Positions 2,836 to 54,274 of a stretch of DNA of 64,000 nucleotides are shown in pieces. Source of the DNA: Zootoca vivipara (Eukaryota); assembly GCF_963506605.1 (NCBI RefSeq), contig NC_083276.1, positions 82,584,001 to 82,648,000 of the forward strand. The letters run 5' to 3'. The notes under the pieces were generated by a model. That model saw nothing but the letters and a program-made list of their open reading frames with translations. It was not told the DNA's origin and did no database searches. The position numbers and the translations under genes were made by a program. Positions within the stretch are counted from its first letter, which is position 1; every line of letters starts with the position of its first letter.

Positions 2836-3780
2836 TAGGGTTTCCAGATGTCCCCATTTCCCGGGGACAGTCCCCGGATTTGCGAATCTGTCTCCGGACA
2901 AATTCAATCCCCAGGATATCCCCGGATTTCATCTAATATCCCCGGGAAATGCGGCAGCAGCAGCCTCAGCAGCCTGGAGCCAGCCTGGTAGCTGCAGTTG
3001 GTTCTGGATGGCTTCAGGAGCTGCCCACTGCCATGCCGCCCACCATTTTGCCTCGCCGGAAGTCCCCATTTGATGGTGGTGCAGGGGCTCTAAGATGCAG
3101 CTTCCAGGCTGCCTCCACCTTCCCTGACCCCAACTAAGCTGTGAAGGGAGGCTTCATGCTGCCCATCAGAGCAGCCCTGATCCTAACTCAGTGTTTCTCA
3201 ACCAGTGTGCCTCCAGATGTTTTGGGACTACAACTCCCATCATCCCTAGCTAGCAAGACCAGTGGTCAGGAATGATGGGAGTTGTAGTCCCAAAACATCT
3301 GGAGGCACACTGGTTGAGATACACTGTCCTAACTCCTACTTGCGTGCAAGCAGGAGCGGGGCGGGGATCTCTCAGTTAGGCAATGGGAAGCCTCCCTTCC
3401 CAACTGAGGGATACCTGCCCCCTCCTGCTTGCAGGCAAGTAGGAATGGGATTGGGGCTGCTCCGATGGGAAGGGAGGCATTGCACTGCCCAAGCTGCGGC
3501 TCTCAGCCCTCCCCCGCCTTCCATGCCTGACCCACCGCGCACTGCCTCCCCACCACCACCATCACCAAAGAACCAACAACTCAGGGGCTGCCCAGCCTCA
3601 TGGAGAAAGGAGATAGAAGCCCCGGAGGAAGGGGAAATGTGGCGGTTGAGGTCAAGGCAGTGGCTGCACCTCTGCCACTGCCATCGCTGCAGCATCAACA
3701 TCCAGAACATTATTTGTTTGTTTGTTTGTTTGTTTGTTTAAAGTGTCCCTGGATTCATTGAAAAAAATCTGGTAACCTTA
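2836..3780. mobile_element. non-autonomous hAT DNA transposon containing a nested MITE
   Basis: Termini TAGGGTTTCCAGA / TCTGGTAACCTTA; 8-bp TSD CCATAAAA (2828-2835, 3781-3788). Confidence 0.8.
3189..3326. mobile_element. palindromic hAT MITE (138 bp)
   Basis: Long terminal inverted repeats; TSD TCCTAACT; almost identical to 21184-21321. Confidence 0.9.
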
Positions 3781-11400: not shown

Positions 11401-11576
11401 TCAATGCATTCAGTTAAGCCTGCCCAGCCCCACTCCCTTTTATTTTTAAGGGGAAAGGGTTATATGAACCACTCCGTTACCTGTGTACACATTCTGTGTA
11501 CCTGTTATTACATTGTATTGCATTGTACTGTATTATATTATATTATATTATATTTATTATATTATATTATACTATA

Positions 11577-12141
11577 CAGTGGTACCTCTACTTACGAATT
11601 TAATGTGTTCCGAACGCACATTCGTAAGTAGAAAAAAATTGTAAGTCGAATCCCATAGGAATGCATTGGGAGAAAAAAATCGTTAAGTCGAAGCAACCCT
11701 ATCTAAAAATTCGTAAGTAGAAAAAATCCTATCTAAACCGCATCTAAGATGGTGGACGGAGCATCATTCGTAAGTACAGTGGTACCTTGGTTTATGAACA
11801 CTAATTGGTTCCGGAAGTCTGTTCATAAACTGAAGCGTTCATAAACTGAAGCGAACTTTCCCATTGAAAGTAATGGAAAGTGGATTAATCCTTTCCAGAC
11901 GGGTCCATGGAGTACTCAACCTGAAGCGTACTTAACCCGAAGCATGGGTGTAATTGGTTCTGGAAGTCTGTTCATAAACTGAAGCGTTCATAAACTGAAG
12001 CGAACTTTCCCATTGAAAGTAATGGAAAGTGAATTAATCCGTTCCCGATGGGTCCGCGGCGTTCATAAACCAAAAATTCATAAACCAAGGTGTTCATAAA
12101 CCGAGGTTCCACTATAGAAACATTTGTAAGTAGAGTTATTT
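11577..12141. mobile_element. Tc1/mariner-superfamily (pogo/Tigger-like) MITE with a second MITE nested at 11777-12114
   Basis: Two TA|CAGTGGTACCT starts; the inner element ends CCGAGGTTCCACTA|TA; the outer element is cut off by the N gap. Confidence 0.75.
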
Positions 12142-12354
12142 NNNNNNNNNNNNNNNNNNNNNNNNNNNNNNNNNNNNNNNNNNNNNNNNNNNNNNNNNNN
12201 NNNNNNNNNNNNNNNNNNNNNNNNNNNNNNNNNNNNNNNNNNNNNNNNNNNNNNNNNNNNNNNNNNNNNNNNNNNNNNNNNNNNNNNNNNNNNNNNNNNN
12301 NNNNNNNNNNNNNNNNNNNNNNNNNNNNNNNNNNNNNNNNNNNNNNNNNNNNNN
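12142..12354. other. assembly gap (N run)
   Basis: 213 consecutive N. Confidence 1.
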
Positions 12355-12730
12355 GCACATTGCAAAGTGCCTTGCAATTGAGCCACTCATCATCTTAATT
12401 TGCCCAGAGGCATAGATACATCTTAATTAGCATTTAAAAAAATATTGTCATGTGATAATCTCTAATGAAAAATGAAACATGCTTTTTTGTGGGGAATCTT
12501 TGAAAACAGTTTTGGCCCAATTTAACAGAGGTGGCCACACACCCCGGTCATCCTGATTGGTCAGCCTGGGGGCGTGACACAGCTGGGAGTCCCAATGATG
12601 CAGACGGCATCCCTCCGCCCACAGCCGGGTCACCAGGAGGCCCAGAGGCCCTCCCGCAATGCCGTCCCCCAAGTAAGAGGAGCGGACTTCTTGAAACTTA
12701 CATAGATGGCATCTTTCCCCCTTGCAAATA

Positions 12731-12894
12731 CAGTGGTACCTCAGGTTACAGACGCTTCAGGTTACAGACGCTTCAGGTTACAGACTCCGCTAACCCAGAA
12801 ATAGTAACTCGGGTTAAGAACTTTGCTTCAGGGTGAGAACAGAAATCGTGCAGCGGCGGCAGCGGGAGGCCCCATTAGTTAAAGTGGTACCTCA
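12731..12894 (+). mobile_element. 5' half of a Tc1/mariner-type MITE (copy A), broken at the duplication junction
   Basis: TA|CAGTGGTACCTCAGGTTAC start; ends abruptly at AAAGTGGTACCTCA where the duplicated OR segment begins. Confidence 0.85.
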
Positions 12895-13092
12895 TTGATT
12901 AGGTTCCATGTTGTTATTTTTCTCAGATGTTTTATTCGTAGATGGAGACATTGATACCATGATCCACTGATATGAAGACACGTTCCATTGCAGAAATACC
13001 AAAAGGTTCTTAGTGTGGCCGTTTTCCCTAGTCATTCCTATTTCCCCTCCACTTTTCTGAGGAATAGAGACTGCACATCATCAAATAACAAA

Positions 13093-14031
13093 ATGGCAGG
13101 AGAAAATCATACTGTGGTGGCAGAATTTTTCCTCTCAGGCCTCACAGAAAATCCTAAGGTGGCCCTTATTTGTTTTCTCTTCTTTCTAGCAATGTACCTG
13201 GTCACTTGTGTGGGGAATCTCGGGATGATTGCCTTGATTAGAATCGATTCCCGACTCCATACCCCTATGTACTATTTCCTCAGCAACTTAGCTTTTGTGG
13301 ATTTCTGCTATTCCTCAACTATAACTCCCAAGACACTGGTGAATTTCTTAGCTGTCAGGAAAGCCATTTCATTTGGTGGCTGCATTGCACAATTGTTCAG
13401 CTTTGTCCTGACTGCAAGCGTTGAGTGCCTTCTGCTGGCTGTCATGGCCTATGACCGATATGTGGCCATTTGTAACCCACTCCTCTATACAGTCATAATG
13501 ACAAAGAAGGTCTGCGCTCAGCTGGTAGGCATTACCTATCTTATCGCCTTGATCCATGCTCTTGCCCAAACTATCTCCACATTCAGGCTCTCCTTCTGTG
13601 CCTCCAATGTCATCAATCATTATTTCTGTGACATTCCTCCTCTCATAAAGCTCTCCTGCAGCGATACCTACAGCAATGAGATTGTGCTTTACACCTTTGG
13701 CACTTTCCATGGCATCTTCACCTCAGCAGAGATTGTTGTCTCCTATGTGTACATCATCTCCACGATCTTGCATATTCGCTCTTCAGAAGGCAGACGCAAA
13801 GCCTTCTCTACCTGTGCCTCTCACCTCACAGCTGTCTTGATATTTTATGGAACCACAGTGTTCATGTATGTCCGGCCAATTTCAAGCTACTCTCTGGGCC
13901 GAGACAAAGTGATCTCTGTGTTCTACACAGTGGTGATCCCCATGCTGAATCCCCTGATCTACAGCCTGAGGAATAAGGAGGTGAAGGATGCGCTGATGAG
14001 ATTCTCAGGAAGGCTGAAGTTTTCTCAATAA
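13093..14031 (+). CDS. olfactory receptor, family 5-like, 312 aa (derived duplicate copy)
   Basis: ATG at 13093 ([14 protein letters not shown], sequon NHT); [41 protein letters not shown]. Confidence 0.93.
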
Positions 14032-15281
14032 GCAAATGTAGTACATGGACAGAAACCCTGGTTAGAATAGATTGTTTCGTGCATCACTGGTACTCCTAAC
14101 TGTGCAAAATTGAAATAAAACAAAAAATGTGCTTGTTTTTAACGTTGGTATACTGTCCAATAACTCTGGGTGGCAAATATTACAGTTTATAAGCCTTGAA
14201 AAAATGTAACATGTGAATCAAGGGGGAAAAGCAACGAATCCATATTTATTTTTAAAAAATAGAAGAGATAAAATAACCAGCTGAAAACTATATAAAACAG
14301 CATTTAAAAGCACTAAAAGATTGTAAGAATTCAAAATACCTGGGAAAATAACAAGGTATCAGCTGGTGCTGAAAGAGCAGGTGAGCCTCTCTGGAGAGGG
14401 GTACATTGCCCAAAAGACCCTCTATTCAGTAACCATGTACTGCAGCTCATTTAGTGGGGACCAACCAGAAAAGGGTCTCTGAAGATGACTTTAGGTCCAG
14501 ATAGGCATATATGGATGGTGGTAATAATCATGTAAGCCAGCCCCAAACCATTTAGGGCTTTAAAGGTTAAAATCAGTAGACCTATTGAAATGAATGGGCA
14601 TGACTAAGTTAGGATAATTGCAGTGGGGCGGCTATGAGTAAAAAAATAGTTGAATGTCACTCATTCAGATTTTATCAAATGTTGCATTGTGTAAGAAAAC
14701 ACTACTAATGGTGACCCACTTCATTGTGGGCCCTTGTGCAAAATATAGTTTGGGCACCCAGTTTAGTTGGATTATACAGAGCAAAGGAAGCAGCGACCTA
14801 GGCAAATAGTTCATTTATGAAGCAGAAAACCCATTAAAAAATAAAAATAAAACTCACAAAACAGCTGTCAAGAAGACCAGGTCTCTAAAACCTAGGATTC
14901 AGCCCCTTGGCAGTTTAGCAGGTGCCAATTGGACAGAGATGAAAAAAGGCAACTCTTGCAAAGTGGTACACTTCCACCACTCCTGTAGTTCAACCAGCCT
15001 AAGCCAAGAGACCCCCAGACTTTACCAAACAACCTCAAGACTCCCAAAAAGCAAGAGCTAAGAACCATGCTCTCTGCCTTGAGGGCCTTGAGTCCACAAG
15101 GTTACCCAGTAGCAGTTTAACCAACAGGCCAATTAACTGGATCCACCACCATGGCTTTCCCCAAGAAACCACACCAAGGATTGAAGATGTAGATTTATTG
15201 TAATAATTAAAACTGACAGCAAAAAAGACAGAACCTGCGTGCCAGTGAGAAATATATTGCTTAAAAAAAAACTGTTTAGAG

Positions 15282-15511
15282 ACAAGGTTCCCAACGTGGG
15301 GCACACACCCCACAGGGGGGCAATTTGTTTTTTAGGGTGGGGGCAATTTGGAAGCTTGTTTAGACCAAATTAATGACCTTTTAGGCTTCCTCCATGTGAA
15401 TAGGAGTTCACTTTTTGAATAATAAGAATTATATGTCACGGGGGGAGGGCGGGCATCAGAATTTTACAGATGCTTAGGTGGGGCATGGCCAAAAAAGGTT
15501 GGGAACTACTG
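15282..15511. mobile_element. hAT MITE (also present in the right arm, ~22097-22326)
   Basis: GTTCCCAAC / GTTGGGAAC termini; TSD GTTTAGAG. Confidence 0.7.
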
Positions 15512-15668
15512 GTTTAGAGCATAAAGTACAATTGGGAATTATAATACAGTACAGAAATAAAACAATAAAGCTAACTTAATCTAGCTCTAATACATACCAA
15601 CAGAGCCCTCCCTCAGGAAGAAAACACAAAGGTGTCAGTTAAGGTATGAGGCACAAGACAAAGAAATA

Positions 15669-15782
15669 CAGTGGTACCTTGGGTTACAAACGCTTCAGGT
15701 TACAGACTCTGCTAACGCAGAAATAGTACCCCGGGTTAAGAACTTTGCTTCAGGATGAGAACAGAAATCGTGCTCTGGCGGC

Positions 15783-15813
<31 letters not shown>

Positions 15814-15909
15814 CCCCCATTAGCTAAAGTGGTACCTCAGGTTAAGAACAGTTTCAGGTTAAGAATGGACCTCCAGAACGAATTAAGTTCTTAACCCGAG
15901 GTACCACTG
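15669..15909 (+). mobile_element. Tc1/mariner-type MITE, apparently chimeric (5' part from copy B, 3' part from copy A)
   Basis: TA-flanked CAGTGGTACCT...AGGTACCACTG. The 5' part is near-identical to the right-arm MITE; the last ~80 bp differ from it at about 8 positions. Confidence 0.85.
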
Positions 15910-16336
15910 TATCCCACATGATACCAGGGGGCAACATCAGCTTGTTGGAGGGAAGTTTACATACATATATGGTGGTTTTGCAAATCTGTTCACCCATTTG
16001 GGGCTTTGGTATTCAAAGAATTGAGTTTAATAGAAAAAGCAGGCCTGCAAACTTCCCCTCAACTTACTTTACTTGCAATAAAGAACATGTCTGCTCCACC
16101 AATTTTTCATAAAGTCCTTTTAACATTCCTCCTCGTGGTGGCATGTATGGAAATAGCCATGTGATGGCGCACTACCTTGGGCTTGAACATTGAAGCAGAG
16201 TACTGCAGAGCATGGACAATAGCCCTGGCTGAGAAGACATAACACATTCATGTGACCAAAGGGAATTCTAACTCCCATCAGTTCTATTAAGTGTGGCAAC
16301 CATTTTTGGATGACATGCATCAAGAAGATTGTGCTT

Positions 16337-17220
16337 AATAATAATAACAATAACAATAACAATAACAATAATAATAATTTATTTATACATTGCCCATCTG
16401 GCTGGGTTTCCCCAGCCACTCTGGGCGGCTTCCAACAGAAAAATAAAATAATTGATTAAACATTAAAAGCCTCCCTAAACAGGGCTGCCTTCAGATGTCT
16501 TCTAAAAATCTGGTAGCTGTTTTTCTCTTTGACATCTGATGGGAGGGCATTCCACAGGACGGGCGCCACCACCGAGAAGGCCCTCTGCCTGGTTCCCTGC
16601 AACCTGGCTACTCGCAATGAGGGAACCACCAGAAGGCCCTCGGTACTGGACCTCAGTGTCCGGGCAGAACGATGGGGGTGGAGATGCTCCTTCAGGTATA
16701 CTGGACCGAGGCTATTTAGGGCTTTAAAGGTCAGCACCAACACTTTGAATTGTGCTCGGAAACAGACTGGGAGCCAATGTAGATCTTCCAAGACCGGTGT
16801 TATGTGGTCTCGGCGGCCGCTCCCAGTCTCCAGCCTAGCTGCCGCATTCTGGATTAGTTGTAGTTTCCAGGTCACCTTCAAAGGTAACCCCACGTAGAGC
16901 GCATTGCAGTAGTCCAAGCGAGAGATAACTAGAGCATGCACCACCCTGGCGAGACAGTCTGCAGGCAGGTAGGGTCTCGGCCTGTGTACCAGATGGAGCT
17001 GGTAGACAGCCACCCTGGACACAGAATTAACCTGTGCCTCCATGGACAGCTGTGAGTCCAAAATGACTCACAGGCTGCGCACCTGGTCCTTCAGGGGCAC
17101 AGTTATCCCATTCAGGACCAGGGAGTCTTCCACACCTGCCCGCTTCCTGTCCCCCACAAACAGAATTTCTGTCTTGTCAGGATTCAACCTCAATCTGTTA
17201 GCCGCCATCCATCCTCCAAG
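16337..17220 (-). mobile_element. L2 LINE, 5'-truncated (RT C-terminal region plus 3' tail)
   Basis: ORF 16456-17061 has SRLDYCNALYVGLP...QNAAARL...HITPVL..LHWLP, typical of the L2 clade; microsatellite tail. Confidence 0.9.
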
Positions 17221-17689
17221 AGAACTCAGGCAATATGTGGGGAAAAAATAATTGGAGTGAACTATAAGAATTTGGTTCAATATTTTTAAGAAAAGTAATT
17301 GATGTGTTGGGAGTTGTGTTGTTTTATGTGTAATGTGAAAAATGAAAAAAAATTAAATAATAATAATAATTTAATGCATACGGTAGAGGAGCCATCCTGG
17401 CGAGAATATGAACTAGCCCATTTTATCTGGTATGATTAGCTTACAGGGACGGAACCATGCTGTGGGAAAATAGGGGGGCAGATCTGGGCAAGATAAGGAG
17501 GAGGAATCGTGGGTCATTTTTGTCATGATGCACAGGCATGCCAAGGTGTCATGTCCAAACCAGCATTCGCTCCAGAGAACCTGCATCTGCCTTTCTCTAA
17601 TTTGAAGCAACGTCTTTGAAACGGAGTTGAATTTTAACAAGGCACTGAGGAGCCAATTTGCCAGAACTTTCAGACTTCTTGCATAAGTT

Positions 17690-17980
17690 ACATAATGGCA
17701 GGCTGGCAAGCAATAACTTTTTAATCATGCCCGCGAGGGCTTATTAGTATAGCTGGGAGTTGACACAGTTGCCGGAGATATGAGTCAATTACCTTAAACT
17801 GATCACCTCAAATCCAGAGGCAGAAGAGCTCAAAGGGGAAAACCCCTGGAGTCTTCATTTTTGTTTTCTTGCCAGAATTGGGACCATTAGGCTGAAGCAG
17901 TGCACACAATCTCTATGGTGCATGTCTTTGTTCCCAAGAAAGGAGCAAGAATTGGCTACAGAAAATTCCCTAGGAGAGAT
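17690..17980. promoter_or_regulatory. candidate OR enhancer: homeodomain and O/E (Lhx2/Ebf-type) motif cluster
   Basis: AACTTTTTAATCA (17715-17727); O/E-like CCCGCGAG (17730-17737) with TAAT sites on both sides; second composite CCCTGGAG-TC-TTCATTT (17844-17860); TCCCTAGGAG (17967-17976). Non-repetitive DNA away from any OR 5' end. Confidence 0.5.
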
Positions 17981-18224
17981 TGGTAAGGGGAAGAAAAACT
18001 ACTTGTATGATCTCCAACTCTGAGACTACACAGAACATTAATCATGCACTTCTATTTTCTATTCTATTACACATGACAGAGTGAATCACCTCCGAGTATG
18101 AGTACCATTCTTGTTAGCCACACGTCCCCATCTTCCCAGTCTGGGCCTGCCATTTGTCCTATCCCCTGCTGACCCCACAGGGGAAAAACACAGAACATAG
18201 AGTTTAAACTGAGAGTTGCCTATA

Positions 18225-18543
18225 AGGGGGCCCCTGACCATCAGGTCCAGTCGTGTCTGACTCTGGGGTTGCGGCACTCATCTCGCTCTATAGGCCGAGG
18301 GAGCCGGTGTTTGTCCGCAGACAGCTTCCGGGTCATGTGGCCAGCATGACAAAGCTGCTTCTGGCAAACCAGAGCAGCGCACGGAAACGCCGTTTACCTT
18401 CCCGCCGGAGCGGTCCCTATTTATCTACTTGCACTTTGATGTGCTTTCGAACTGCTAGGTAGGCAGGAGCTGGGACCGAGCAATGGGAGCTCACCCCATT
18501 GCAGGGATTCGAACAGCCGACCTTCTGATCAGCAAGCCCTAGA
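18225..18543 (-). mobile_element. Sauria SINE
   Basis: Close similarity to 8616-8955. Confidence 0.85.
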
Positions 18544-19038
18544 CACCTGGGTCCCTGAGAGTTGCTTATAGAAAGCAGCTATATGAAAATCCAAGCATGG
18601 TGTATTTGCTAGAACACAGCAGAAGTTATGGGAAAGGGGCATTAATTCATGCTACTCAAAGCTGAAGCTTCAGCCATTCATGCATTCCCATTGCCAGGGT
18701 GGCCCATCCAGTTTCACTGCCTGAAAAAAGATCTCATGACAGCTCTATGAGCTCCCACGAGCAGGGGCGGAGGAAGTGGGGTGCAATGGGTGCAGATCGC
18801 CCTGGGTGTCACCACTGGGGGGGGTGACAAAATGCCAGGCGGCACTCACCGCGGGGCTTGCAGCGCGCCCGAGCCTCGCGTCTCTCCTGGGAGAGATGTG
18901 GCAGCCTGGGGGGGGTGCAGGCTCTGCACTGCCCAAACAGTCCACCCACTGCCTCTCCCCCCCCCCCAGCTGTAGGGCGGCTGAGTGGGAGGAGGCAGGC
19001 AGACTACGGAGGCCTCGCGGTGCGCCCCACCCCTATGG

Positions 19039-19161
19039 TAAGGTTACCAGGGTTTTTTCAATGAATCCCGGGACACTTTTCAACTTCAATGGATTTTGTA
19101 TGGGGACAGATTGGTAAATCCGGGGACTGTCCCCAGGAAACGGGGGCGTCTGGTAACCTTA
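19039..19161. mobile_element. hAT MITE nested in a GC-rich hAT-like element (~18763-19300)
   Basis: TAAGGTTACCAG / CTGGTAACCTTA TIRs; TSD CCCTATGG. Confidence 0.8.
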
Positions 19162-20029
19162 CCCTATGGGCGGCTTGCCCTGCCCCTATGGACTGCTTGT
19201 CGTGTCTCTGGGTGTGCCGCCCCAGGCGCCTGAGTGCTGCCCATGAGATCTTGACGGAAGCTGCACCCACCACAGCCGCAACAGCCGCACAACCCCAGCA
19301 GTGACAGGGGTAGGTCTATGGAGGCACAGCTTCATGGGATTCCAGATCCCCCAAGTGTCCCTATTTTCCAGAGACAATCCCAGATATACAGAATCCATCC
19401 TGGTTTCTGATTTGAATGCCCTACTTCTCTTTAAAGGTAAAGAGAAATTACCTGAAATATTTCTCTTCAACACGGAAGTGTATTTTATACCCGGTTATTT
19501 ATTGATCTGGCTTCTCACGTGAGAATCATCAACCCCTGTCTGTAAGGCCCCTCTCCCTAGTATCACGTCCATAACTTGAGGTTGCACCACTTTCTCACTT
19601 TTTCCAAGGCCTCTGGTTGTTAGGTCAGGACCATTCTACTCTCCATCACCACTTTCTCACCTTTTCCAAGGCCTCTGGTTAATGGGTTAGTTACCCTCTT
19701 ACCCTTGCTCATAGCATAACTGGTTTTCCTGGCGGCTGGTATTTTTTATTTCTCTTTCCCTTCAGACCACATCTCAAGTGCTCCTACTGATCCGATTTCT
19801 AGCCTGGAGTAACAGTGCAATGGACTTCGCGCAAGCTACCTATATGGTATTATAGCACAGCGCTGCACCAGTTTAGCACAGCGCGTTTAGCACAGTTTAG
19901 CACAGCGCTGCACCAGTTTAGCACAGCGCGCGGGAGACTCACTTAGCAGGGAGCTCGGTTCACGAGGGCCGGATAAACGGGGCCCATGGGCCGTATCCGG
20001 CCCATGGGCCAGAGGTTGCCAACCTCTGT

Positions 20030-20263
20030 TCTGGAGGTTCCCTCACTGCGAGAAACGAAGTTACAGGGAACCAGGCAGAGGGCCTTCCCGCCCTGTGGAA
20101 CACCCTCCCTTCAGATGTCAAGGAAATAAACAACTATCTGACTTTTAGAAGACAACTGAAGGCAGCCCTGTTTAGGGAAGCGTTTAATATTTGATGAATT
20201 ATTGTATTTTAATATTTTGCTGGAAGCCGCCCAGGGTGGCTGGGGAAACCCATCCAGATGGGC

Positions 20264-20314
<51 letters not shown>
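20030..20314 (+). mobile_element. L2 3' end with (TTA)n tail
   Basis: Matches the 3' end of the L2 at 16.3-16.6 kb (GAAGGCAGCCCTGTTTAGGGA, GGAAGCCGCCCAG). Confidence 0.8.
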
Positions 20315-20315
<1 letters not shown>

Positions 20316-21183
20316 TCCCTTTTAGCACAATTGGAGGTGTCTTCATGTTTTACAGGCCCATGCTTTAAGCCAAGGTTGGCGGTAGTAGTGGACTGTGGCC
20401 TTCTTGATGTTGTTGGGACTCCCAACTCCCACCAACCTCAGCCAGCATGGCCAATGGTCAGGGATTGGTGGGAGCTTGTAGCTCAGTAACATTTGGTGGG
20501 CCATAAGTACCCCACCCCTGGCTTAGATCATCCGCCTTTGGAGTTGCCTGGCTCAAGTTCCTAAGGCTCTATGTTGTTTCTCAAGTCTCCATCATTATAC
20601 AGGGTGCTTTACACTGCAACATAAGCAACAGAGACATGTCCCTGTCCCAAATTTTGTAAGAAGGGAGCGGAGTGCCTGGCGGAAAGAGGGCCAAAAAAAA
20701 TAGGAGACAAATACGTGTAAATGCAGCTGCACTTATTTAGGCTTAGCTCAAGTAAAGAGTGAAACCGAAAGGGCATCACAGAACAAAAAGGCTTTGAAAA
20801 AGAAGCTTGGAGGAAACAACTATTGTATATCACTAGCTTAGAGTTCAGAAACAATAGCTTGAATCTCCTATATTGTGAATAACATTGCACGGACGGCCTA
20901 TAGATGGATCTTTGGTGACATCTAGTGGCTGGTTTAAAAAAATGTATTCATTCAGTCTTCTCAAACCAAAGGAATGGGAAGTTTTTTTCAATTCTAGGCC
21001 CGTTTAGATTTTAAAGGATCAAATACCAGGTGAAGAAACTATGTGGAGGTTATACTCAGCAGTATTCTGCTTCTCTGTCCATTACTAATAAAGGATGCAA
21101 TACCCCACATTATTGTTGAGGAGTGCTGACAATCGACATGCTGCTGGCTTGCCACTCAACCATACCCTAGTCATGAGTTAGGC

Positions 21184-21321
21184 CAGTGTTTCTCAACCAG
21201 TGTGCCTCCAGATGTTTTGGGACTACAACTCCCATCATCCCTAGCTAGCAAGACCAGTGGTCAGGAATGATGGGAGTTGTAGTCCCAAAACATCTGGAGG
21301 CACACTGGTTGAGAAACACTG
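21184..21321. mobile_element. palindromic hAT MITE
   Basis: TSD AGTTAGGC; near-identical to 3189-3326. Confidence 0.9.
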
Positions 21322-21560
21322 AGTTAGGCTTCCCTCTTGCCTTCAGAAGTTTTGTTAAGTATCTTTCCATAAGAACAACCCCTCAAATTGATAATCCCGT
21401 CACACAAGAGAGGGGAAAGCAATGGGGCAAAAGCAAAGCTGCTTAGACCAATGAACTAGCAGCAAATCACTTAGTCCCATGCTTTCTAGGCATGTGACAG
21501 GCAGAAGTATGGACAAACCCTTCTTGCATTGCTAGGCTATGTAATATAAAGTTACCCATA

Positions 21561-21795
21561 CAGTGGTACCTCTGGTTAAGAACTTAATTCGTTACGGATG
21601 TCCGTTCTTAACCTGAAACTGTTCTTTACCTGAGACACCACTTTAGCTAATGGGGGCTCCTGCTGCTGCTGCTGCTGCTGCGCCGCCAGAGCACGATTTC
21701 TGTTCTCATCCTGAAGCAAAGTTCTTAACCCGGGGTACTATTTCTGCGTTAGCAGAGTCTGTAACCTGAAGCGTTTGTAACCCAAGGTACCACTC
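21561..21795 (-). mobile_element. Tc1/mariner-type MITE (copy B)
   Basis: TA-flanked CAGTGGTACCT TIRs; lies at the inner end of the right duplication arm. Confidence 0.85.
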
Positions 21796-21879
21796 TATTT
21801 CTTTGTCTTGTGCCTCATACCTTAACTGACACCTTTGTGTTTTCTTCCTGAGGGAGGGCTCTGTTGGTATGTATTAGAG

Positions 21880-22015
21880 CAGGCATCCCCAAACTGCGGC
21901 CCTCCAGATGTTTTGGCCTACAACTCCCATGATCCCTAGCTAACAGAACCAGTGGTTGGGGAAGATGGGAATTGTAGTCCAAAACATCTGGAGGGCCGAA
22001 GTTTGGGGATGACTG
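21880..22015. mobile_element. hAT MITE present only in the right arm
   Basis: TSD TATTAGAG (21872-21879, 22016-22023); the left arm has the empty site CTCTAATA at ~15585. Confidence 0.9.
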
Positions 22016-23577
22016 TATTAGAGCTAGATTAAGTTAGCTTTATTGTTTTATTTCTGTACTGTATTATAATTCCCAATTGTACTTTATGCTCTAAACCAGT
22101 AGTTCCCAACCTTTTTTGGCCATGCCCCACCTAAGCATCTGTAAAATTCTGATGCCCGCCCTCCCCCCGTGACATATAATTCTTATTATTCAAAAAGTGA
22201 ACTCCTATTCACATGGAGGAAGCCTAAAAGGTCATTAATTTGGTCTAAACAAGCTTCCAAATTGCCCCCACCCTAAAAAACAAATTGCCCCCCTGTGGGG
22301 TGTGTGCCCCACGTTGGGAACCTTGTCTCTAAACAGTTTTTTTTTAAGCAATATATTTCTCACTGGCACGCAGGTTCTGTCTTTTTTGCTGTCAGTTTTA
22401 ATTATTACAATAAATCTACATCTTCAATCCTTGGTGTGGTTTCTTGGGGAAAGCCATGGTGGTGGATCCAGTTAATTGGCCTGTTGGTTAAACTGCTACT
22501 GGGTAACCTTGTGGACTCAAGGCCCTCAAGGCAGAGAGCATGGTTCTTAGCTCTTGCTTTTTGGGAGTCTTGAGGTTGTTTGGTAAAGTCTGGGGGTCTC
22601 TTGGCTTAGGCTGGTTGAACTACAGGAGTGGTGGAAGTGTACCACTTTGCAAGAGTTGCCTTTTTTCATCTCTGTCCAATTGGCACCTGCTAAACTGCCA
22701 AGGGGCTGAATCCTAGGTTTTAGAGACCTGGTCTTCTTGACAGCTGTTTTGTGAGTTTTATTTTTATTTTTTAATGGGTTTTCTGCTTCATAAATGAACT
22801 ATTTGCCTAGGTCGCTGCTTCCTTTGCTCTGTATAATCCAACTAAACTGGGTGCCCAAACTATATTTTGCACAAGGGCCCACAATGAAGTGGGTCACCAT
22901 TAGTAGTGTTTTCTTACACAATGCAACATTTGATAAAATCTGAATGAGTGACATTCAACTATTTTTTTACTCATAGCCGCCCCACTGCAATTATCCTAAC
23001 TTAGTCATGCCCATTCATTTCAATAGGTCTACTGATTTTAACCTTTAAAGCCCTAAATGGTTTGGGGCCGGCTTACATGATTATTACCACCATCCATATA
23101 TGCCTATCTGGACCTAAAGTCATCTTCAGAGACCCTTTTCTGGTTGGTCCCCACTAAATGAGCTGCAGTACATGGTTACTGAATAGAGGGTCTTTTGGGC
23201 AATGTACCCCTCTCCAGAGAGGCTCACCTGCTCTTTCAGCACCAGCTGATACCTTGTTATTTTCCCAGGTATTTTGAATTCTTACAATCTTTTAGTGCTT
23301 TTAAATGCTGTTTTATATAGTTTTCAGCTGGTTATTTTATCTCTTCTATTTTTAAAAAATAAATATGGATTCGTTGCTTTTCCCCCTTGATTCACATGTT
23401 ACATTTTTTTCAAGGCTTATAAACTGTAATATTTGCCACCCAGAGTTATTGGACAGTATACCAACATTAAAAACAAACACATTTTTTGTTTTATTTCAAT
23501 TTTGCACAGTTAGGAGTACCAGTGATGCACGAAACAATCTATTCTAACCAGGGTTTCTGTCCATGTACTACATTTGC

Positions 23578-24516
23578 TTATTGAGAAAACTTCAGCCTTC
23601 CTGAGAATCTCATCAGCGCATCCTTCACCTCCTTATTCCTCAGGCTGTAGATCAGGGGATTCAGCAGGGGGATCACCACTGTGTAGAACACAGAGATCAC
23701 TTTGTCTCGGCCCAGAGAGTAGCTTGAAATTGGCCGGACATACATGAACACTGTGGTTCCATAAAATATCAAGACAGCTGTGAGGTGAGAGGCACAGGTA
23801 GAGAAGGCTTTGCGTCTGCCTTCTGAAGAGCGAATATGCAAGATCGTGGAGATGATGTACACATAGGAGACAACAATCTCTGCTGAGGTGAAGATGCCAT
23901 GGAAAGTGCCAAAGGTGTAAAGCACAATCTCATTACTGTAGGTATCGCTGCAGGAGAGCTTTATGAGAGGAGGAATGTCACAGAAATAATGATTGATGAC
24001 ATTGGAGGCACAGAAGGAGAGCCTGAATGTGGAGATAGTTTGTGCAAGAGCATGGATCAAGGCGATAAGATAGGTAATGCCTACCAGCTGAGCGCAGACC
24101 TTCTTTGTCATTATGACTGTATAGAGGAGTGGGTTACAAATGGCCACGTATCGGTCATAGGCCATGACAGCCAGCAGAAGGCACTCAACGCTTGCGGTCA
24201 GGACAAAGCTGAACAATTGTGCAATGCAGCCACCAAATGAAATGGCTTTCCTGACAGCTAAGAAATTCACCAGTGTCTTGGGAGTTATAGTTGAGGAATA
24301 GCAGAAATCCACAAAAGCTAAGTTGCTGAGGAAATAGTACATAGGGGTATGGAGTCGGGAATCGATTCTAATCAAGGCAATCATCCCGAGATTCCCCACA
24401 CAAGTGACCAGGTACATTGCTAGAAAGAAGAGAAAACAAATAAGGGCCACCTTACGATTTTCTGTGAGGCCTGAGAGGAAAAATTCTGCCACCACAGTAT
24501 GATTTTCTCCTGCCAT
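23578..24516 (-). CDS. olfactory receptor, family 5-like, 312 aa (presumed original copy)
   Basis: ATG at 24516; differs from 13093-14031 only at ENPK/ENRK and PMLNP/PLLNP. Confidence 0.93.
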
Positions 24517-25447
24517 TTTGTTATTTGATGATGTGCAGTCTCTATTCCTCAGAAAAGTGGAGGGAAAATAGGACCACACTAAGAACCTTTTGGTATTTCT
24601 GCAATGGAACGTGTCTTCATATCAGTGGATCATGGTATCAATGTCTCCATCTGAGAAAAATAACAACATGGAACCTAATCAATGATAATCCTGAGCAATG
24701 TTAATAATTCTAACTAACAATAAATAATATGTAAATGCAAGTTGAAAACTGGATGAAGATAATGTATAACAAATATGTATGTGTTTTTCTTTGTCAGTAT
24801 GTGTTCCCTCCAACATTCTTTTGAGAAAGAAAGTGCTAAGAATTAAACTGTCCTTGATTGCTGTGACCTCTTTCAAATCTCAGTTGACATATCCATTTCT
24901 CTAGCACTAACTGTTCCAGACTCTTTCACTGAAAATATATAAATATAATTGAACCCACATAAATCAGTACTGTATATCAAAGATTCCTATTGTATAACAG
25001 TCATTATCTCAGTTTAGAACTGTAACATGTCTATTCAGAGTTCAAAGGGACTTACTCCCAAGTAAGTGTGCACAGAATTATACTGATTTGGGTGTAAACC
25101 CTACTTACTTCTGAGTAGACAGTATTTATTTATTTTAAAAAAAACCCTCAAAGTGGTACACAAAGACATGTGCAATAACAAGACACAAACATCACAAAAG
25201 GTTCTTCAGCAAAGTACCGGTAATCCTATCATCTTCGAATGTGACAGCTATCAATAAATACAATTTTAAAAAGCAAATATTGAATTAATTACCCACACTT
25301 TACTTTTAATGTAGTTATAAGGAATGTTTACAGTTCAAGGCATATAATTGGCATTGCTTGGGGGTGTTGGTGAGTGAAAAAGACAGACTAAGTAGTGACT
25401 TTTTATAAGCTTGCTAATTTAGTCCATGGAATAAGATATTGCATGAT

Positions 25448-53177: not shown

Positions 53178-54274
53178 CAGGGGCGTAGCCAGGATGAAAA
53201 TCAGGGGGGGCAAGGGGCGGGGAGCAAGGGGCGGGGCCAAGGGCGGGGCCAAGGGGCGGGGGCGGGGCCACATCGGAGCAGCCCGAAATCGGGCTGCTCC
53301 GACTCCCTCCTCCCCCTCCGCGATAGGAAGGGACGAGGGGGAGCCAGGATCAGCCCGAAATCGGGCTGCTCCGACTCCCTCCTCCCCCTCCACGATCGGA
53401 AGGGACGAGGGGGAGCCAGGATCAGCCCGAAATCGGGCTGCTCCGACTCCCTCCTCCCCCTCCGCGATAGGAAGGGACGAGGGGGAGCCAGGATCAGCCC
53501 GAAATCGGGCTGCTCCGACTCCCTCCTCCCCCTCCACGATCGGAAGGGACGAGGGGGAGCCAGGATCAGCCCGAAATCGGGCTGCTCCGACTCCCTCCTC
53601 CCCCTCCGTGATAGGAAGGGACGAGGGGGAGCCAGGATCAGCCCGAAATCGGGCTGCTCCGACTCCCTCCTCCCCCTCCGCGATAGGAAGGGACGAGGGG
53701 GAGCCAGGATCAGCCCGAAATCGGGCTGCTCCGACTCCCTCCTCCCCCTCCACGATCGGAAGGGACGAGGGGGAGCCAGGATCAGCCCGAAATCGGGCTG
53801 CTCCGACTCCCTCCTCCCCCTCCGCGATAGGAAGGGACGAGGGGGAGCCAGGATCAGCCCGAAATCGGGCTGCTCCGACTCCCTCCTCCCCCTCCACGAT
53901 CGGAAGGGACGAGGGGGAGCCAGGATCAGCCCGAAATCGGGCTGCTCCGATCCCCTCCTCCCCCTCTGCAATCGCTGGGGCAGGTGGAGGGAAAGCCCCA
54001 GAGCCGCGCAAAGCGGTTGCCTGGCTTTCCCTCCGCCCGCCCCACAGCCAGCCGGCTAGAAGGGACGTCTCCCTTCTCCCTTGCTGGCTGTGGGGCGGAG
54101 GGAGGGAAAGCCAGCCAAACGCTTCGCGCGGCTCTGGTGCTTTCCCGCCGCCCGCCCCACAGCCAGCCAGGGAGAAGGGAGACGGCACCGGGCGGGCAGT
54201 GGGGCAGGCTGGCCAGTGGCCCTGCTTCTAGGGGGGGCAATTGCCCCCTCCTGCCCCCCCTGCCTACGCCCATG
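53178..54274. mobile_element. GC-rich hAT element nested in the HAL1-like element
   Basis: CAGGGGCGTAGCCAGG / CCTGCCTACGCCCATG; TSD TCCCCAAT (53170-53177, 54275-54282). Confidence 0.9.
53279..53970 (+). repeat. 72-bp minisatellite, about 9.6 copies
   Basis: GCCCGAAATC recurs at 53281, 53353 and so on; 24-aa periodic chance ORFs. Confidence 0.95.

What the first reader, a model, noticed from the sequence alone, without database searches (positions are those of the whole stretch)
12731..24685. OR gene birth by MITE-templated inverted duplication, with the junctions still readable
Seen: 12892-15830 is an inverted near-identical copy of ~21640-24685. The left copy starts right after the 5' half of MITE A, which stops at AAAGTGGTACCTCA (12881-12894), joined through a 3-nt TCA overlap. 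At its other end, the MITE at 15669-15909 matches right-arm MITE B up to ~15830. It then reads AAAGTGGTACCTCA (A type; B has GTGGTGTCTCA) and differs from B at about 8 of the last ~80 bp. Inference: MITE A broke at an internal TIR-like site, one end invaded MITE B about 6 kb away, copied about 3 kb including a whole OR coding exon, and rejoined by microhomology (SDSA/MMBIR-like). Abundant short MITEs could therefore act as landing pads for OR repertoire expansion.
Basis: partly seen in the sequence, partly recalled or inferred. Interest (0 to 1): 0.8.

Follow-up and report, generated by a model that had tools for sequence, protein, structure and literature searches.

The report
Smell-receptor gene copied into a MITE
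A lizard olfactory receptor gene was recently copied, in reverse orientation, into the middle of a small transposon relic about 6-9 kb away; both joints are still readable and fit a known DNA-repair copying process, so this is a clean example of a known process, not a new mechanism.

Summary
Window 12895-15912 is an inverted copy of 21558-24685, with about 0.5% substitutions over 2.8 kb. Each copy carries an intact 312-aa olfactory receptor (OR) ORF. The left copy sits inside a Tc1/mariner-type MITE, called A here. A's 5' part ends at 12894 and joins the copy through a 3-nt TCA microhomology. At the other end the MITE is a chimera: identical to the parental MITE B up to 15824, then 10% different (8 of 79 sites) to its end. 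That 10% equals the A-versus-B divergence in the 5' part.

The best reading is a template-switch or gap-filling insertion into MITE A. One junction used microhomology and the other used MITE-MITE homology. This is the class published as animal single-copy "Pack-TIRs" (Tan et al. 2021), combined with an Alu/Alu-type chimeric-repeat junction.

Not shown:
- that the new copy is expressed. It carries only 198 bp upstream of its ATG.
- that MITEs generally drive OR expansion.

The scan holds unchecked first-reader notes of similar events elsewhere in this genome. Interest is moderate.

The parts
12142..12354 (.). Assembly gap (213 N), 377 bp left of MITE A. It is the only gap in the window.
12731..12894 (+). 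MITE A, 5' part. The terminal repeat CAGTGGTACCTC starts at 12731 and is preceded by TA (12729-12730). The part ends in the internal TIR-like AAAGTGGTACCTCA (12881-12894).
   Evidence: 16/150 substitutions against MITE B
12892..12894 (.). TCA microhomology at the outer junction, shared by MITE A and the parental sequence at 24683-24685.
12895..15666 (+). Captured host DNA: an inverted copy of about 21798-24682 holding the OR coding exon with 198 bp upstream and about 1.6 kb downstream.
12925..13035 (+). Two extra segments in the left copy relative to the parent: 15 bp at 12925-12939 and 17 bp at 13019-13035. Both lie within 141 bp of the microhomology junction.
13093..14031 (+). Daughter OR gene: intact 312-aa ORF with 7tm_4 at E = 1.7e-54.
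15669..15824 (+). 5' part of the chimeric MITE, copied from MITE B (1 difference in 161 aligned sites up to 15833).
15825..15833 (+). Switch interval from B-type to A-type sequence; A, B and the chimera are identical here.
15834..15911 (+). 3' part of the recipient MITE A. It forms a hairpin, ends in the terminal repeat at 15909 and is followed by TA (15910-15911). It differs from B at 8 sites. 15834-15839 repeats 12889-12894.
15913..21557 (.). 5.65-kb spacer between the arms. Its only internal inverted homology is a TE pair, 16337-16634 and 20029-20315, at 81% identity.
21561..21795 (-). Parental MITE B: complete, with TA on both sides, and in inverted orientation relative to A.
21881..22024 (.). 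144-bp segment present only in the right arm: a hAT-like MITE of 136 bp plus one copy of its 8-bp target-site duplication CTCTAATA. The left arm keeps the empty site.
23578..24516 (-). Parental OR gene: intact 312-aa ORF with 7tm_4 at E = 3.6e-54.
21558..24685 (-). Right (parental) arm of the inverted duplication.

Best explanation
A real, recent insertional inverted duplication made by template switching during repair or replication. The ancestral state had two Tc1/mariner-type MITEs of one family, A and B, in inverted orientation 5.65 kb apart. An OR gene lay just beyond B. A break or stalled fork arose in A, within the left arm of its hairpin-forming 3' sub-element. A 3' end finishing in ...CCTCA primed synthesis on the parental OR locus through a 3-nt microhomology (TCA, at 24683-24685). 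About 2.94 kb were copied through the whole OR coding exon and into the 5' two-thirds of MITE B. The new strand then annealed, through MITE B/A homology, to the other side of A. That produced the chimeric B/A MITE and a 6-15-nt duplication of A sequence. The same product arises if the order ran the other way: a homologous switch from A into B first, then a microhomology return to A. The result is an OR coding exon enclosed between the two intact ends of one MITE, that is, a single-copy Pack-TIR-like structure. Shown: the structure, both junctions, which copy is parent and which is daughter, and that both ORFs are intact. Inferred: how the event started (hairpin break, transposase excision or stalled fork), the direction of synthesis, and any function of the new copy.
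For: Arms are 99.5% identical with both OR ORFs intact. The TCA microhomology is readable directly. The chimeric MITE switches from B-type to A-type within 15825-15833. A and B differ at 10.7% of sites in the 5' part, and the chimera and B differ at 10.1% in the 3' part, against 0.5% in the arm (Fisher p = 5e-8). Outgroup MITEs place derived changes on both 3' ends, including CpG-type changes private to 15866 and 15875, so these are two old independent copies. The right copy continues into unique DNA and has a complete MITE B with its own TA flanks, while the left copy is bracketed by the two halves of one MITE, so right is parent and left is daughter. The 3' sub-element folds as a strong DNA hairpin (-20.3 kcal/mol, z = -6.4), and the breakpoints lie in its left stem arm. 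The two indels of 15 bp or more both lie within 141 bp of the microhomology junction. The features match published animal Pack-TIRs: capture in cis within 15 kb, microhomology of median 2 bp, internal breakpoints with little loss of TE sequence, TcMariner elements, and internal breaks possibly caused by secondary structure (PMC8277862).
Against: A scaffold gap lies 540 bp left of the outer junction. The assignment of the 3' 79 bp to A rests on two adjacent bases that are also the family-consensus state, plus equal divergence and parsimony. In a fold of the whole 249-nt MITE, the terminal repeats compete with the sub-element hairpin, so the hairpin as cause of the break is only a suggestion. 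A 3-nt microhomology is weak evidence on its own.
Confidence: 0.72

Rival explanations
1. Assembly artefact. The left arm is a haplotype copy or a chimeric-read product wrongly placed in inverted orientation near the scaffold gap, and the real genome has a single OR copy here.
For: The gap at 12142-12354 is only 540 bp from the outer junction. The differences between arms (0.5% substitutions, indels and one MITE presence/absence) also lie in the range of allelic variation. One junction lies in a repeat, where assemblers can misjoin. No reads could be laid.
Against: Both arms and the 5.65-kb spacer lie on one gap-free contig. The flanks of the two arms are not homologous, so they are not simple haplotigs. 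The outer junction has only 3 nt of overlap, which no overlap-based assembler would create without reads that carry it. The insert sits exactly between collinear halves of one MITE, with a biologically typical small duplication.
Confidence: 0.1
2. An ordinary inverted segmental duplication that copied all of MITE B. The truncated MITE at 12731-12894 is adjacent by chance. The last 79 bp were later overwritten by gene conversion from a third MITE copy, or they escaped arm-to-arm homogenisation in an older palindrome.
For: Homology runs formally to the end of the MITE at 15912. Differences between arms are uneven: there are none in 14540-15668 (max-gap p = 0.03), which hints at some arm-to-arm conversion. 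The AC at 15834-15835 is the family-consensus state, so any MITE copy could have supplied it.
Against: This needs three coincidences: a same-family MITE truncated exactly at the outer junction, truncated at the position homologous to where the inner MITE changes type, and in the collinear orientation. The 3' part diverges from B by the same amount as A's 5' part does. The spacer shows no decayed arm homology beyond one TE pair.
Confidence: 0.08
3. Same product, started by a transposase. A Tc1/mariner transposase excised MITE A, or its 87-nt sub-element using the internal TIR-like site. The gap was repaired from the sister chromatid, with a switch to MITE B and its flank (abortive gap repair).
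For: The internal site is one mismatch from the terminal repeat. Both breakpoints lie within 0-13 nt of that site. Synthesis from both ends on a sister template explains the 6-15-nt duplication of A naturally. Excision-induced gap filling is one of the two published scenarios (PMC8277862). An unchecked scan note reports a Tc1/mariner element that captured a gene piece and multiplied in this genome.
Against: There is no evidence here that a matching transposase is active; A and B are about 10% diverged relics. Tan et al. found that most animal single-copy Pack-TIRs formed without transposition. The breakpoints are not at the expected cleavage position.
Confidence: 0.15

Closest known systems
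Animal single-copy Pack-TIRs formed by transposition-independent gap filling (Tan et al. 2021, Nat Commun, PMC8277862)
   Same: Host DNA of 100-5000 bp enclosed between the two ends of one TIR element. The parent lies in cis within 15 kb. There is microhomology at a breakpoint. Breakpoints are internal to the TE with almost no loss of TE sequence. The element is TcMariner type, and an internal break possibly caused by secondary structure fits.
   Different: The parent here is directly flanked by a same-family MITE, part of which was copied along with it. That MITE supplied a homologous second junction of about 160 bp. The authors' pipeline excludes parents with a TE within 100 bp. The cargo is a complete, intact protein-coding exon, which that paper treats as rare: Ssk-FB4 is called the first potentially functional coding Pack-TIR.
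Alu/Alu-mediated rearrangement with a chimeric repeat at the junction (Song et al. 2018, PMC6071635)
   Same: Two diverged copies of a short interspersed repeat give a chimeric element at the junction, with the switch falling in a short stretch identical in both copies (here 15825-15833).
   Different: The repeat is a DNA-transposon MITE, not a SINE. The event is an insertional inverted duplication whose second junction is a microhomology outside any repeat, not a simple deletion or tandem duplication.
Template switching at inverted repeats in DUP-TRP/INV-DUP rearrangements (PMC4352052, PMC11293582)
   Same: An inverted repeat pair is the substrate for a template switch that creates an inverted extra copy, combined with a second microhomology junction.
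   Different: There is no triplicated segment; the arm occurs only twice in the window. The repeat substrate is about 0.16-0.25 kb at about 90% identity, not kilobases of identical low-copy repeat. The scale is 3 kb, not hundreds of kb.
Plant Pack-MULE and Pack-TYPE transposons
   Same: Host gene sequence carried between transposon ends.
   Different: Those are often multicopy and mobilised, and usually carry gene fragments. Here only one copy is known and mobilisation is untested.

Membership tests
Animal Pack-TIR (operational definition of Tan et al. 2021) | Internal non-TE sequence of 100-5000 bp flanked by two parts of the same TIR element | tested here: met
   2.77 kb of host DNA (12895-15666), plus about 160 bp derived from B, lies between A's 5' part (12731-12894) and A's 3' part (15834-15909)
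Animal Pack-TIR (operational definition of Tan et al. 2021) | Both flanking parts include at least 10 bp of the element's termini | tested here: met
   The 12-nt terminal repeat CAGTGGTACCTC is found at 12731-12742 (+) and 15898-15909 (-), each beside a TA. This was judged against family members in the window, not against a curated consensus.
Animal Pack-TIR (operational definition of Tan et al. 2021) | A unique parental copy at 90% identity or more, with a length ratio of 80-120% | tested here: met
   99.5% identity; arms of 3018 and 3125 bp; the next-best OR in the window is 65-70% identical. Uniqueness in the whole genome was not testable.
Animal Pack-TIR (operational definition of Tan et al. 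2021) | No TE within 100 bp of the parental copy (their control against segmental duplication) | tested here: not met
   MITE B (21561-21795) is part of the copied tract. Their pipeline would exclude this case. It works like a Pack-TIR but fails this filter.
Animal Pack-TIR (operational definition of Tan et al. 2021) | An orthologous TE without the insert in outgroup species | not testable with these tools
Tc1/mariner-type (Stowaway-like) MITE | Short non-coding element with terminal inverted repeats and a TA target-site duplication | tested here: met
   B is 235 bp with the terminal repeats CAGTGGTACCTC and GAGTGGTACC and TA on both sides. The motif occurs 11 times in the window against 0.13 expected. 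The TA rule for Tc1/mariner is established knowledge.
Vertebrate olfactory receptor (Pfam 7tm_4) | Intact single-exon ORF of about 310 aa that matches 7tm_4 above the curated cut-off | tested here: met
   Both copies are 312 aa and score 185-186 bits against a cut-off of 27.
Functional new gene ('gene birth') | Transcription of the daughter copy from a promoter of its own, in olfactory tissue | not testable with these tools
   Only 198 bp upstream of the ATG were copied. pN/pS is 0.16, but from only 2 against 4 changes, which is uninformative.
Mobilised multicopy Pack-MITE | Further copies of the composite element at other loci with their own target-site duplications | not testable with these tools
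   Only this window of the genome is readable, and it holds no third copy of the arm.
DUP-TRP/INV-DUP | An inverted triplicated segment between duplicated segments | tested here: not met
   The arm is present only twice in the window.

The most novel reading that the evidence does not exclude
The 3.18-kb composite (12731-15909) keeps both terminal repeats and the TA flanks of a Tc1/mariner MITE. It could therefore be a mobilisable 'Pack-MITE' carrying a complete OR gene. More broadly, template switching guided by MITE-MITE homology, a class that published Pack-TIR surveys filter out by design, could be a recurrent route by which squamate OR clusters gain inverted paralogues.
Probability: 0.07. 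Interest if true: 0.75.

Novelty: new member of a known kind. Interest (0 to 1): 0.42.

Why it matters
Most OR duplicates are too old for their junctions to be read, so how OR repertoires grow is usually inferred from statistics. Here both junctions of an event about 0.5% old are readable to the base. They assign one new OR paralogue to a defined repair pathway: a switch at microhomology plus a switch at repeat homology into a transposon relic. The case also shows a blind spot in published Pack-TIR surveys, which discard parents flanked by a TE. It gives a rare vertebrate example in which the captured cargo is a whole intact coding exon. If the daughter copy is expressed, it would be a directly datable case of a chemoreceptor gene gained through a TE-assisted repair error.

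Tried and rejected
I also ran no further searches with the OR sequences.

2. The look-up of encoding contigs, with two 47-aa ORFs next to the junctions, was closed and the look-ups were not sent.

3. Two metagenome scans found nothing, one for the outer junction 27-mer and one for the MITE repeat motif. This is uninformative, because that collection is microbial.

4. I looked for a templated donor of the 15-bp and 17-bp extra segments. I found only chance-level 9-10-mer matches. Without an outgroup I cannot tell insertion in the left copy from deletion in the right copy.

5. I tested whether the arms are the homogenised core of an older, longer palindrome. The spacer shows only one inverted TE pair at 81% identity and no further collinear homology. 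Rejected.

6. I tested whether the left copy could be the parent. Rejected: homology stops exactly where MITE A sequence begins, and the right copy has a complete MITE with its own flanks.

7. NAHR between the inverted MITEs alone is rejected by inference. It would give an inversion or a dicentric chromosome, not an insertional copy with a microhomology junction.

8. The hairpin as the sole cause of the break is not established. In the whole-element fold the terminal repeats pair instead.


Full report
**1. What is in the sequence**

The window is an olfactory receptor (OR) cluster of a lizard. The organism is known only from earlier scan notes. Seven intact ORFs match the OR family 7tm_4.

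A repeat search and a self-BLAST show one very young duplicate. Positions 12892-15912 match 21558-24685 in inverted orientation. All other OR pairs in the window are 65-70% identical at the DNA level. The only N run is 12142-12354, so both arms and the 5,645-bp spacer lie on one gap-free contig.

A base-by-base alignment of the arms gives the following.
- From 13036 to 15833 there are 12 substitutions, one 1-bp indel and a (GCA)2 length difference, about 0.5%.
- The left copy has two extra segments, 15 bp at 12925-12939 and 17 bp at 13019-13035.
- The right copy alone has a 144-bp segment at 21881-22024.
- The final 79 bp, 15834-15912, hold 8 substitutions.

The excess of differences in the last 79 bp is significant (8 of 79 against 14 of 2792, Fisher p = 5e-8).

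Each arm holds an intact 312-aa ORF that matches 7tm_4 (E about 1e-54). The two proteins are 310/312 identical. The coding sequences differ by 2 nonsynonymous and 4 synonymous changes.

**2. The junctions**

*Outer junction.* On the left, a Tc1/mariner-type MITE, called A here, has its terminal repeat CAGTGGTACCTC at 12731, preceded by TA. A runs to ...AAAGTGGTACCTCA at 12894. The parent reads ...GGATTATCA at the matching point. Both then continue TTGATTAGG.... The junction is therefore a 3-nt microhomology, TCA.

*Inner junction.* In the three-way alignment, the MITE at 15669-15909 is identical to the parental MITE B (21561-21795, minus strand) except for one base and a microsatellite length. 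This holds through 15824, where it carries B's C and A has T. At 15834-15835 it carries AC, as A does, where B has GT. From there to its end it differs from B at six more sites. The switch therefore lies in 15825-15833, where all three sequences are identical.

*Duplication of A.* A's left part extends to the position homologous to 15839. So 6-15 nt of A (at least ACCTCA, at most TAAAGTGGTACCTCA) are present on both sides of the insert.

**3. Is the 3' end really the other half of A?**

A has no independent copy of this region, so the direct comparison is limited to the 14-nt overlap. That overlap holds two diagnostic bases, and both are also the family-consensus state. Three further arguments support the link.

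- *Equal divergence.* A differs from B at 16 of 150 aligned sites in the 5' part (10.7%). The 3' part of the chimera differs from B at 8 of 79 sites (10.1%). The arm differs at 0.5%.
- *Independent histories.* Against three more distant MITEs in the window, derived states fall on both lineages. B has GT at 21635-21636 and T at 21594. The chimera has T at 15866 and A at 15875, both CpG-type changes, and C at 15897. These are two independently aged copies. The pattern is not one copy mutated after the duplication, and it is not a polishing error toward a consensus.
- *Clean reconstruction.* Removing 12895-15839 rebuilds a collinear, full-length MITE with TA on both sides.

Parent and daughter are also clear. 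The right copy runs on into unique sequence and has a complete MITE with its own flanks. The left copy is bracketed by the two halves of one MITE.

**4. Mechanism**

The structure needs two template switches. One used about 160 bp of roughly 90% MITE-MITE homology, between two MITEs that lay in inverted orientation 5.65 kb apart. The other used a 3-nt microhomology. About 2.94 kb were copied between them.

A blunt break followed by simple rejoining cannot explain the 6-15-nt duplication of A. Synthesis from both ends on a sister template can (gap filling, or SDSA with repeated invasion). So can a replicative switch that returns slightly behind its point of departure (FoSTeS or MMBIR).

The 87-nt 3' sub-element of the MITE folds as a strong DNA hairpin (-20.3 kcal/mol, z = -6.4), and both breakpoints lie in its left stem arm. 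In a fold of the whole 249-nt element the terminal repeats compete with that hairpin. A hairpin-induced break is therefore a suggestion only.

The two indels of 15 bp or more both lie within 141 bp of the microhomology junction. Placed at random, both would fall that close to one given end with probability about 0.002. This fits the error-prone early synthesis known for such repair, which I state from my own knowledge of the break-induced replication literature. I found no donor for the extra bases, and I cannot tell which copy changed.

The sequence alone cannot decide whether a transposase started the event. The breakpoints lie 0-13 nt inside the TIR-like motif, not at its edge.

**5. Comparison with what is known**

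Tan et al. 2021 (PMC8277862) described 370 'Pack-TIRs' in 100 animal genomes. These are host DNA enclosed in hAT or TcMariner elements and are mostly single-copy. Their features are:
- 57% lie within 15 kb of the parent;
- microhomology has a median of 2 bp;
- breakpoints are internal, and the distance between the two breakpoints is a median 4.6% of the TE's size;
- the authors attribute them to transposition-independent gap filling after internal breaks 'possibly induced by secondary structures'.

The present case meets all of these features. It fails one filter of their pipeline: the parent must have no TE within 100 bp. Here the flanking same-family MITE is exactly what supplied the second junction.

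That junction is of the chimeric-repeat type known from Alu/Alu-mediated rearrangements (PMC6071635). Template switching at inverted repeats is also established for DUP-TRP/INV-DUP events (PMC4352052, PMC11293582), although nothing is triplicated here.

The mechanism class is therefore known. The points of interest are the combination of junction types, the readability of both junctions, and the cargo, a complete intact coding exon. Tan et al. call Ssk-FB4 the first potentially functional coding Pack-TIR.

**6. What is not shown**

I rate an artefact at about 10%: a 3-nt junction cannot arise from overlap assembly without reads that carry it, the arms' flanks are not allelic, and the insert sits exactly between collinear MITE halves. 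The gap 540 bp away keeps the doubt open.
- *Expression.* The daughter copy carries only 198 bp upstream of its ATG, including a plausible splice acceptor near 12918-12927. An earlier scan report notes upstream start exons for lizard OR genes. So the parental promoter and any upstream exon were probably left behind. An intact ORF at 0.5% divergence says nothing about function.
- *Generality.* This is one event. The scan holds unchecked first-reader notes of similar readings elsewhere in this genome, s1-855448 and s1-848836. I did not test them and do not count them as support.

**7. Age**

With 0.5% divergence between the copies, and an assumed neutral rate of about 1e-9 per site per year (my assumption, not calibrated for this species), the event is a few million years old at most. 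It would look younger than it is if arm-to-arm conversion has occurred. A hAT-like MITE, with an 8-bp target-site duplication, has entered the right arm since the duplication.

**8. Verdict**

The structural interpretation is supported. The claims of gene birth and of a general landing-pad role are not shown. This is a new member of a known kind of event, of moderate interest.

Noticed in passing
window 21881-22024 (related copies at 21173-21327 and 3182-3335): A 136-bp hAT-like MITE (terminal repeats CAGTCATCCCCAAAC and CAGGCATCCCCAAAC, 8-bp target-site duplication CTCTAATA) is present only in the right arm. The left arm keeps the intact empty site at 15576-15584. The insertion therefore post-dates a duplication that is only 0.5% diverged, which suggests this MITE family was active recently.
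   Followed up: partly
window 14540-15668: The arms show no difference over 1,130 bp, while the preceding 1.5 kb holds 11 substitutions (max-gap simulation p = 0.03). This may be a gene-conversion tract between the arms, or rate variation.
   Followed up: partly
window 12925-12939 and 13019-13035: Two extra segments of 15 and 17 bp in the left copy lie within 141 bp of the microhomology junction. Each looks like an imperfect local duplication. No donor was found, and which copy changed is unknown.
   Followed up: partly
window 16337-16634 and 20029-20315: Two copies of an interspersed repeat that starts with an (AAT/AAC)n tract lie in inverted orientation in the spacer at 81% identity. This is unrelated to the young duplication.
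   Followed up: no
window 11574-12141: A nest of related Tc1/mariner-like MITEs, with terminal repeats TACAGTGGTACCTC..., directly abuts the assembly gap. One contains an internal 149-bp tandem duplication (11802-11913 and 11951-12062, 93% identical).
   Followed up: no
window 25909-26123: A short OR-like fragment, about 67% identical to the duplicated OR, lies upstream of the parental gene. It is probably a pseudogene remnant.
   Followed up: no
window 44522-47413 and 53251-53974: A 963-aa ORF with a reverse-transcriptase domain (a LINE) and a tandem array with a period of about 72 bp in a GC-rich region lie within the OR cluster.
   Followed up: no
window 12355-18354: Runs under nine other organism labels (B to J) each hold almost the same share, 0.24-0.25, of the sampled 31-mers. 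I could not tell whether this reflects close relatives at limited coverage or one conserved sub-segment.
   Followed up: no
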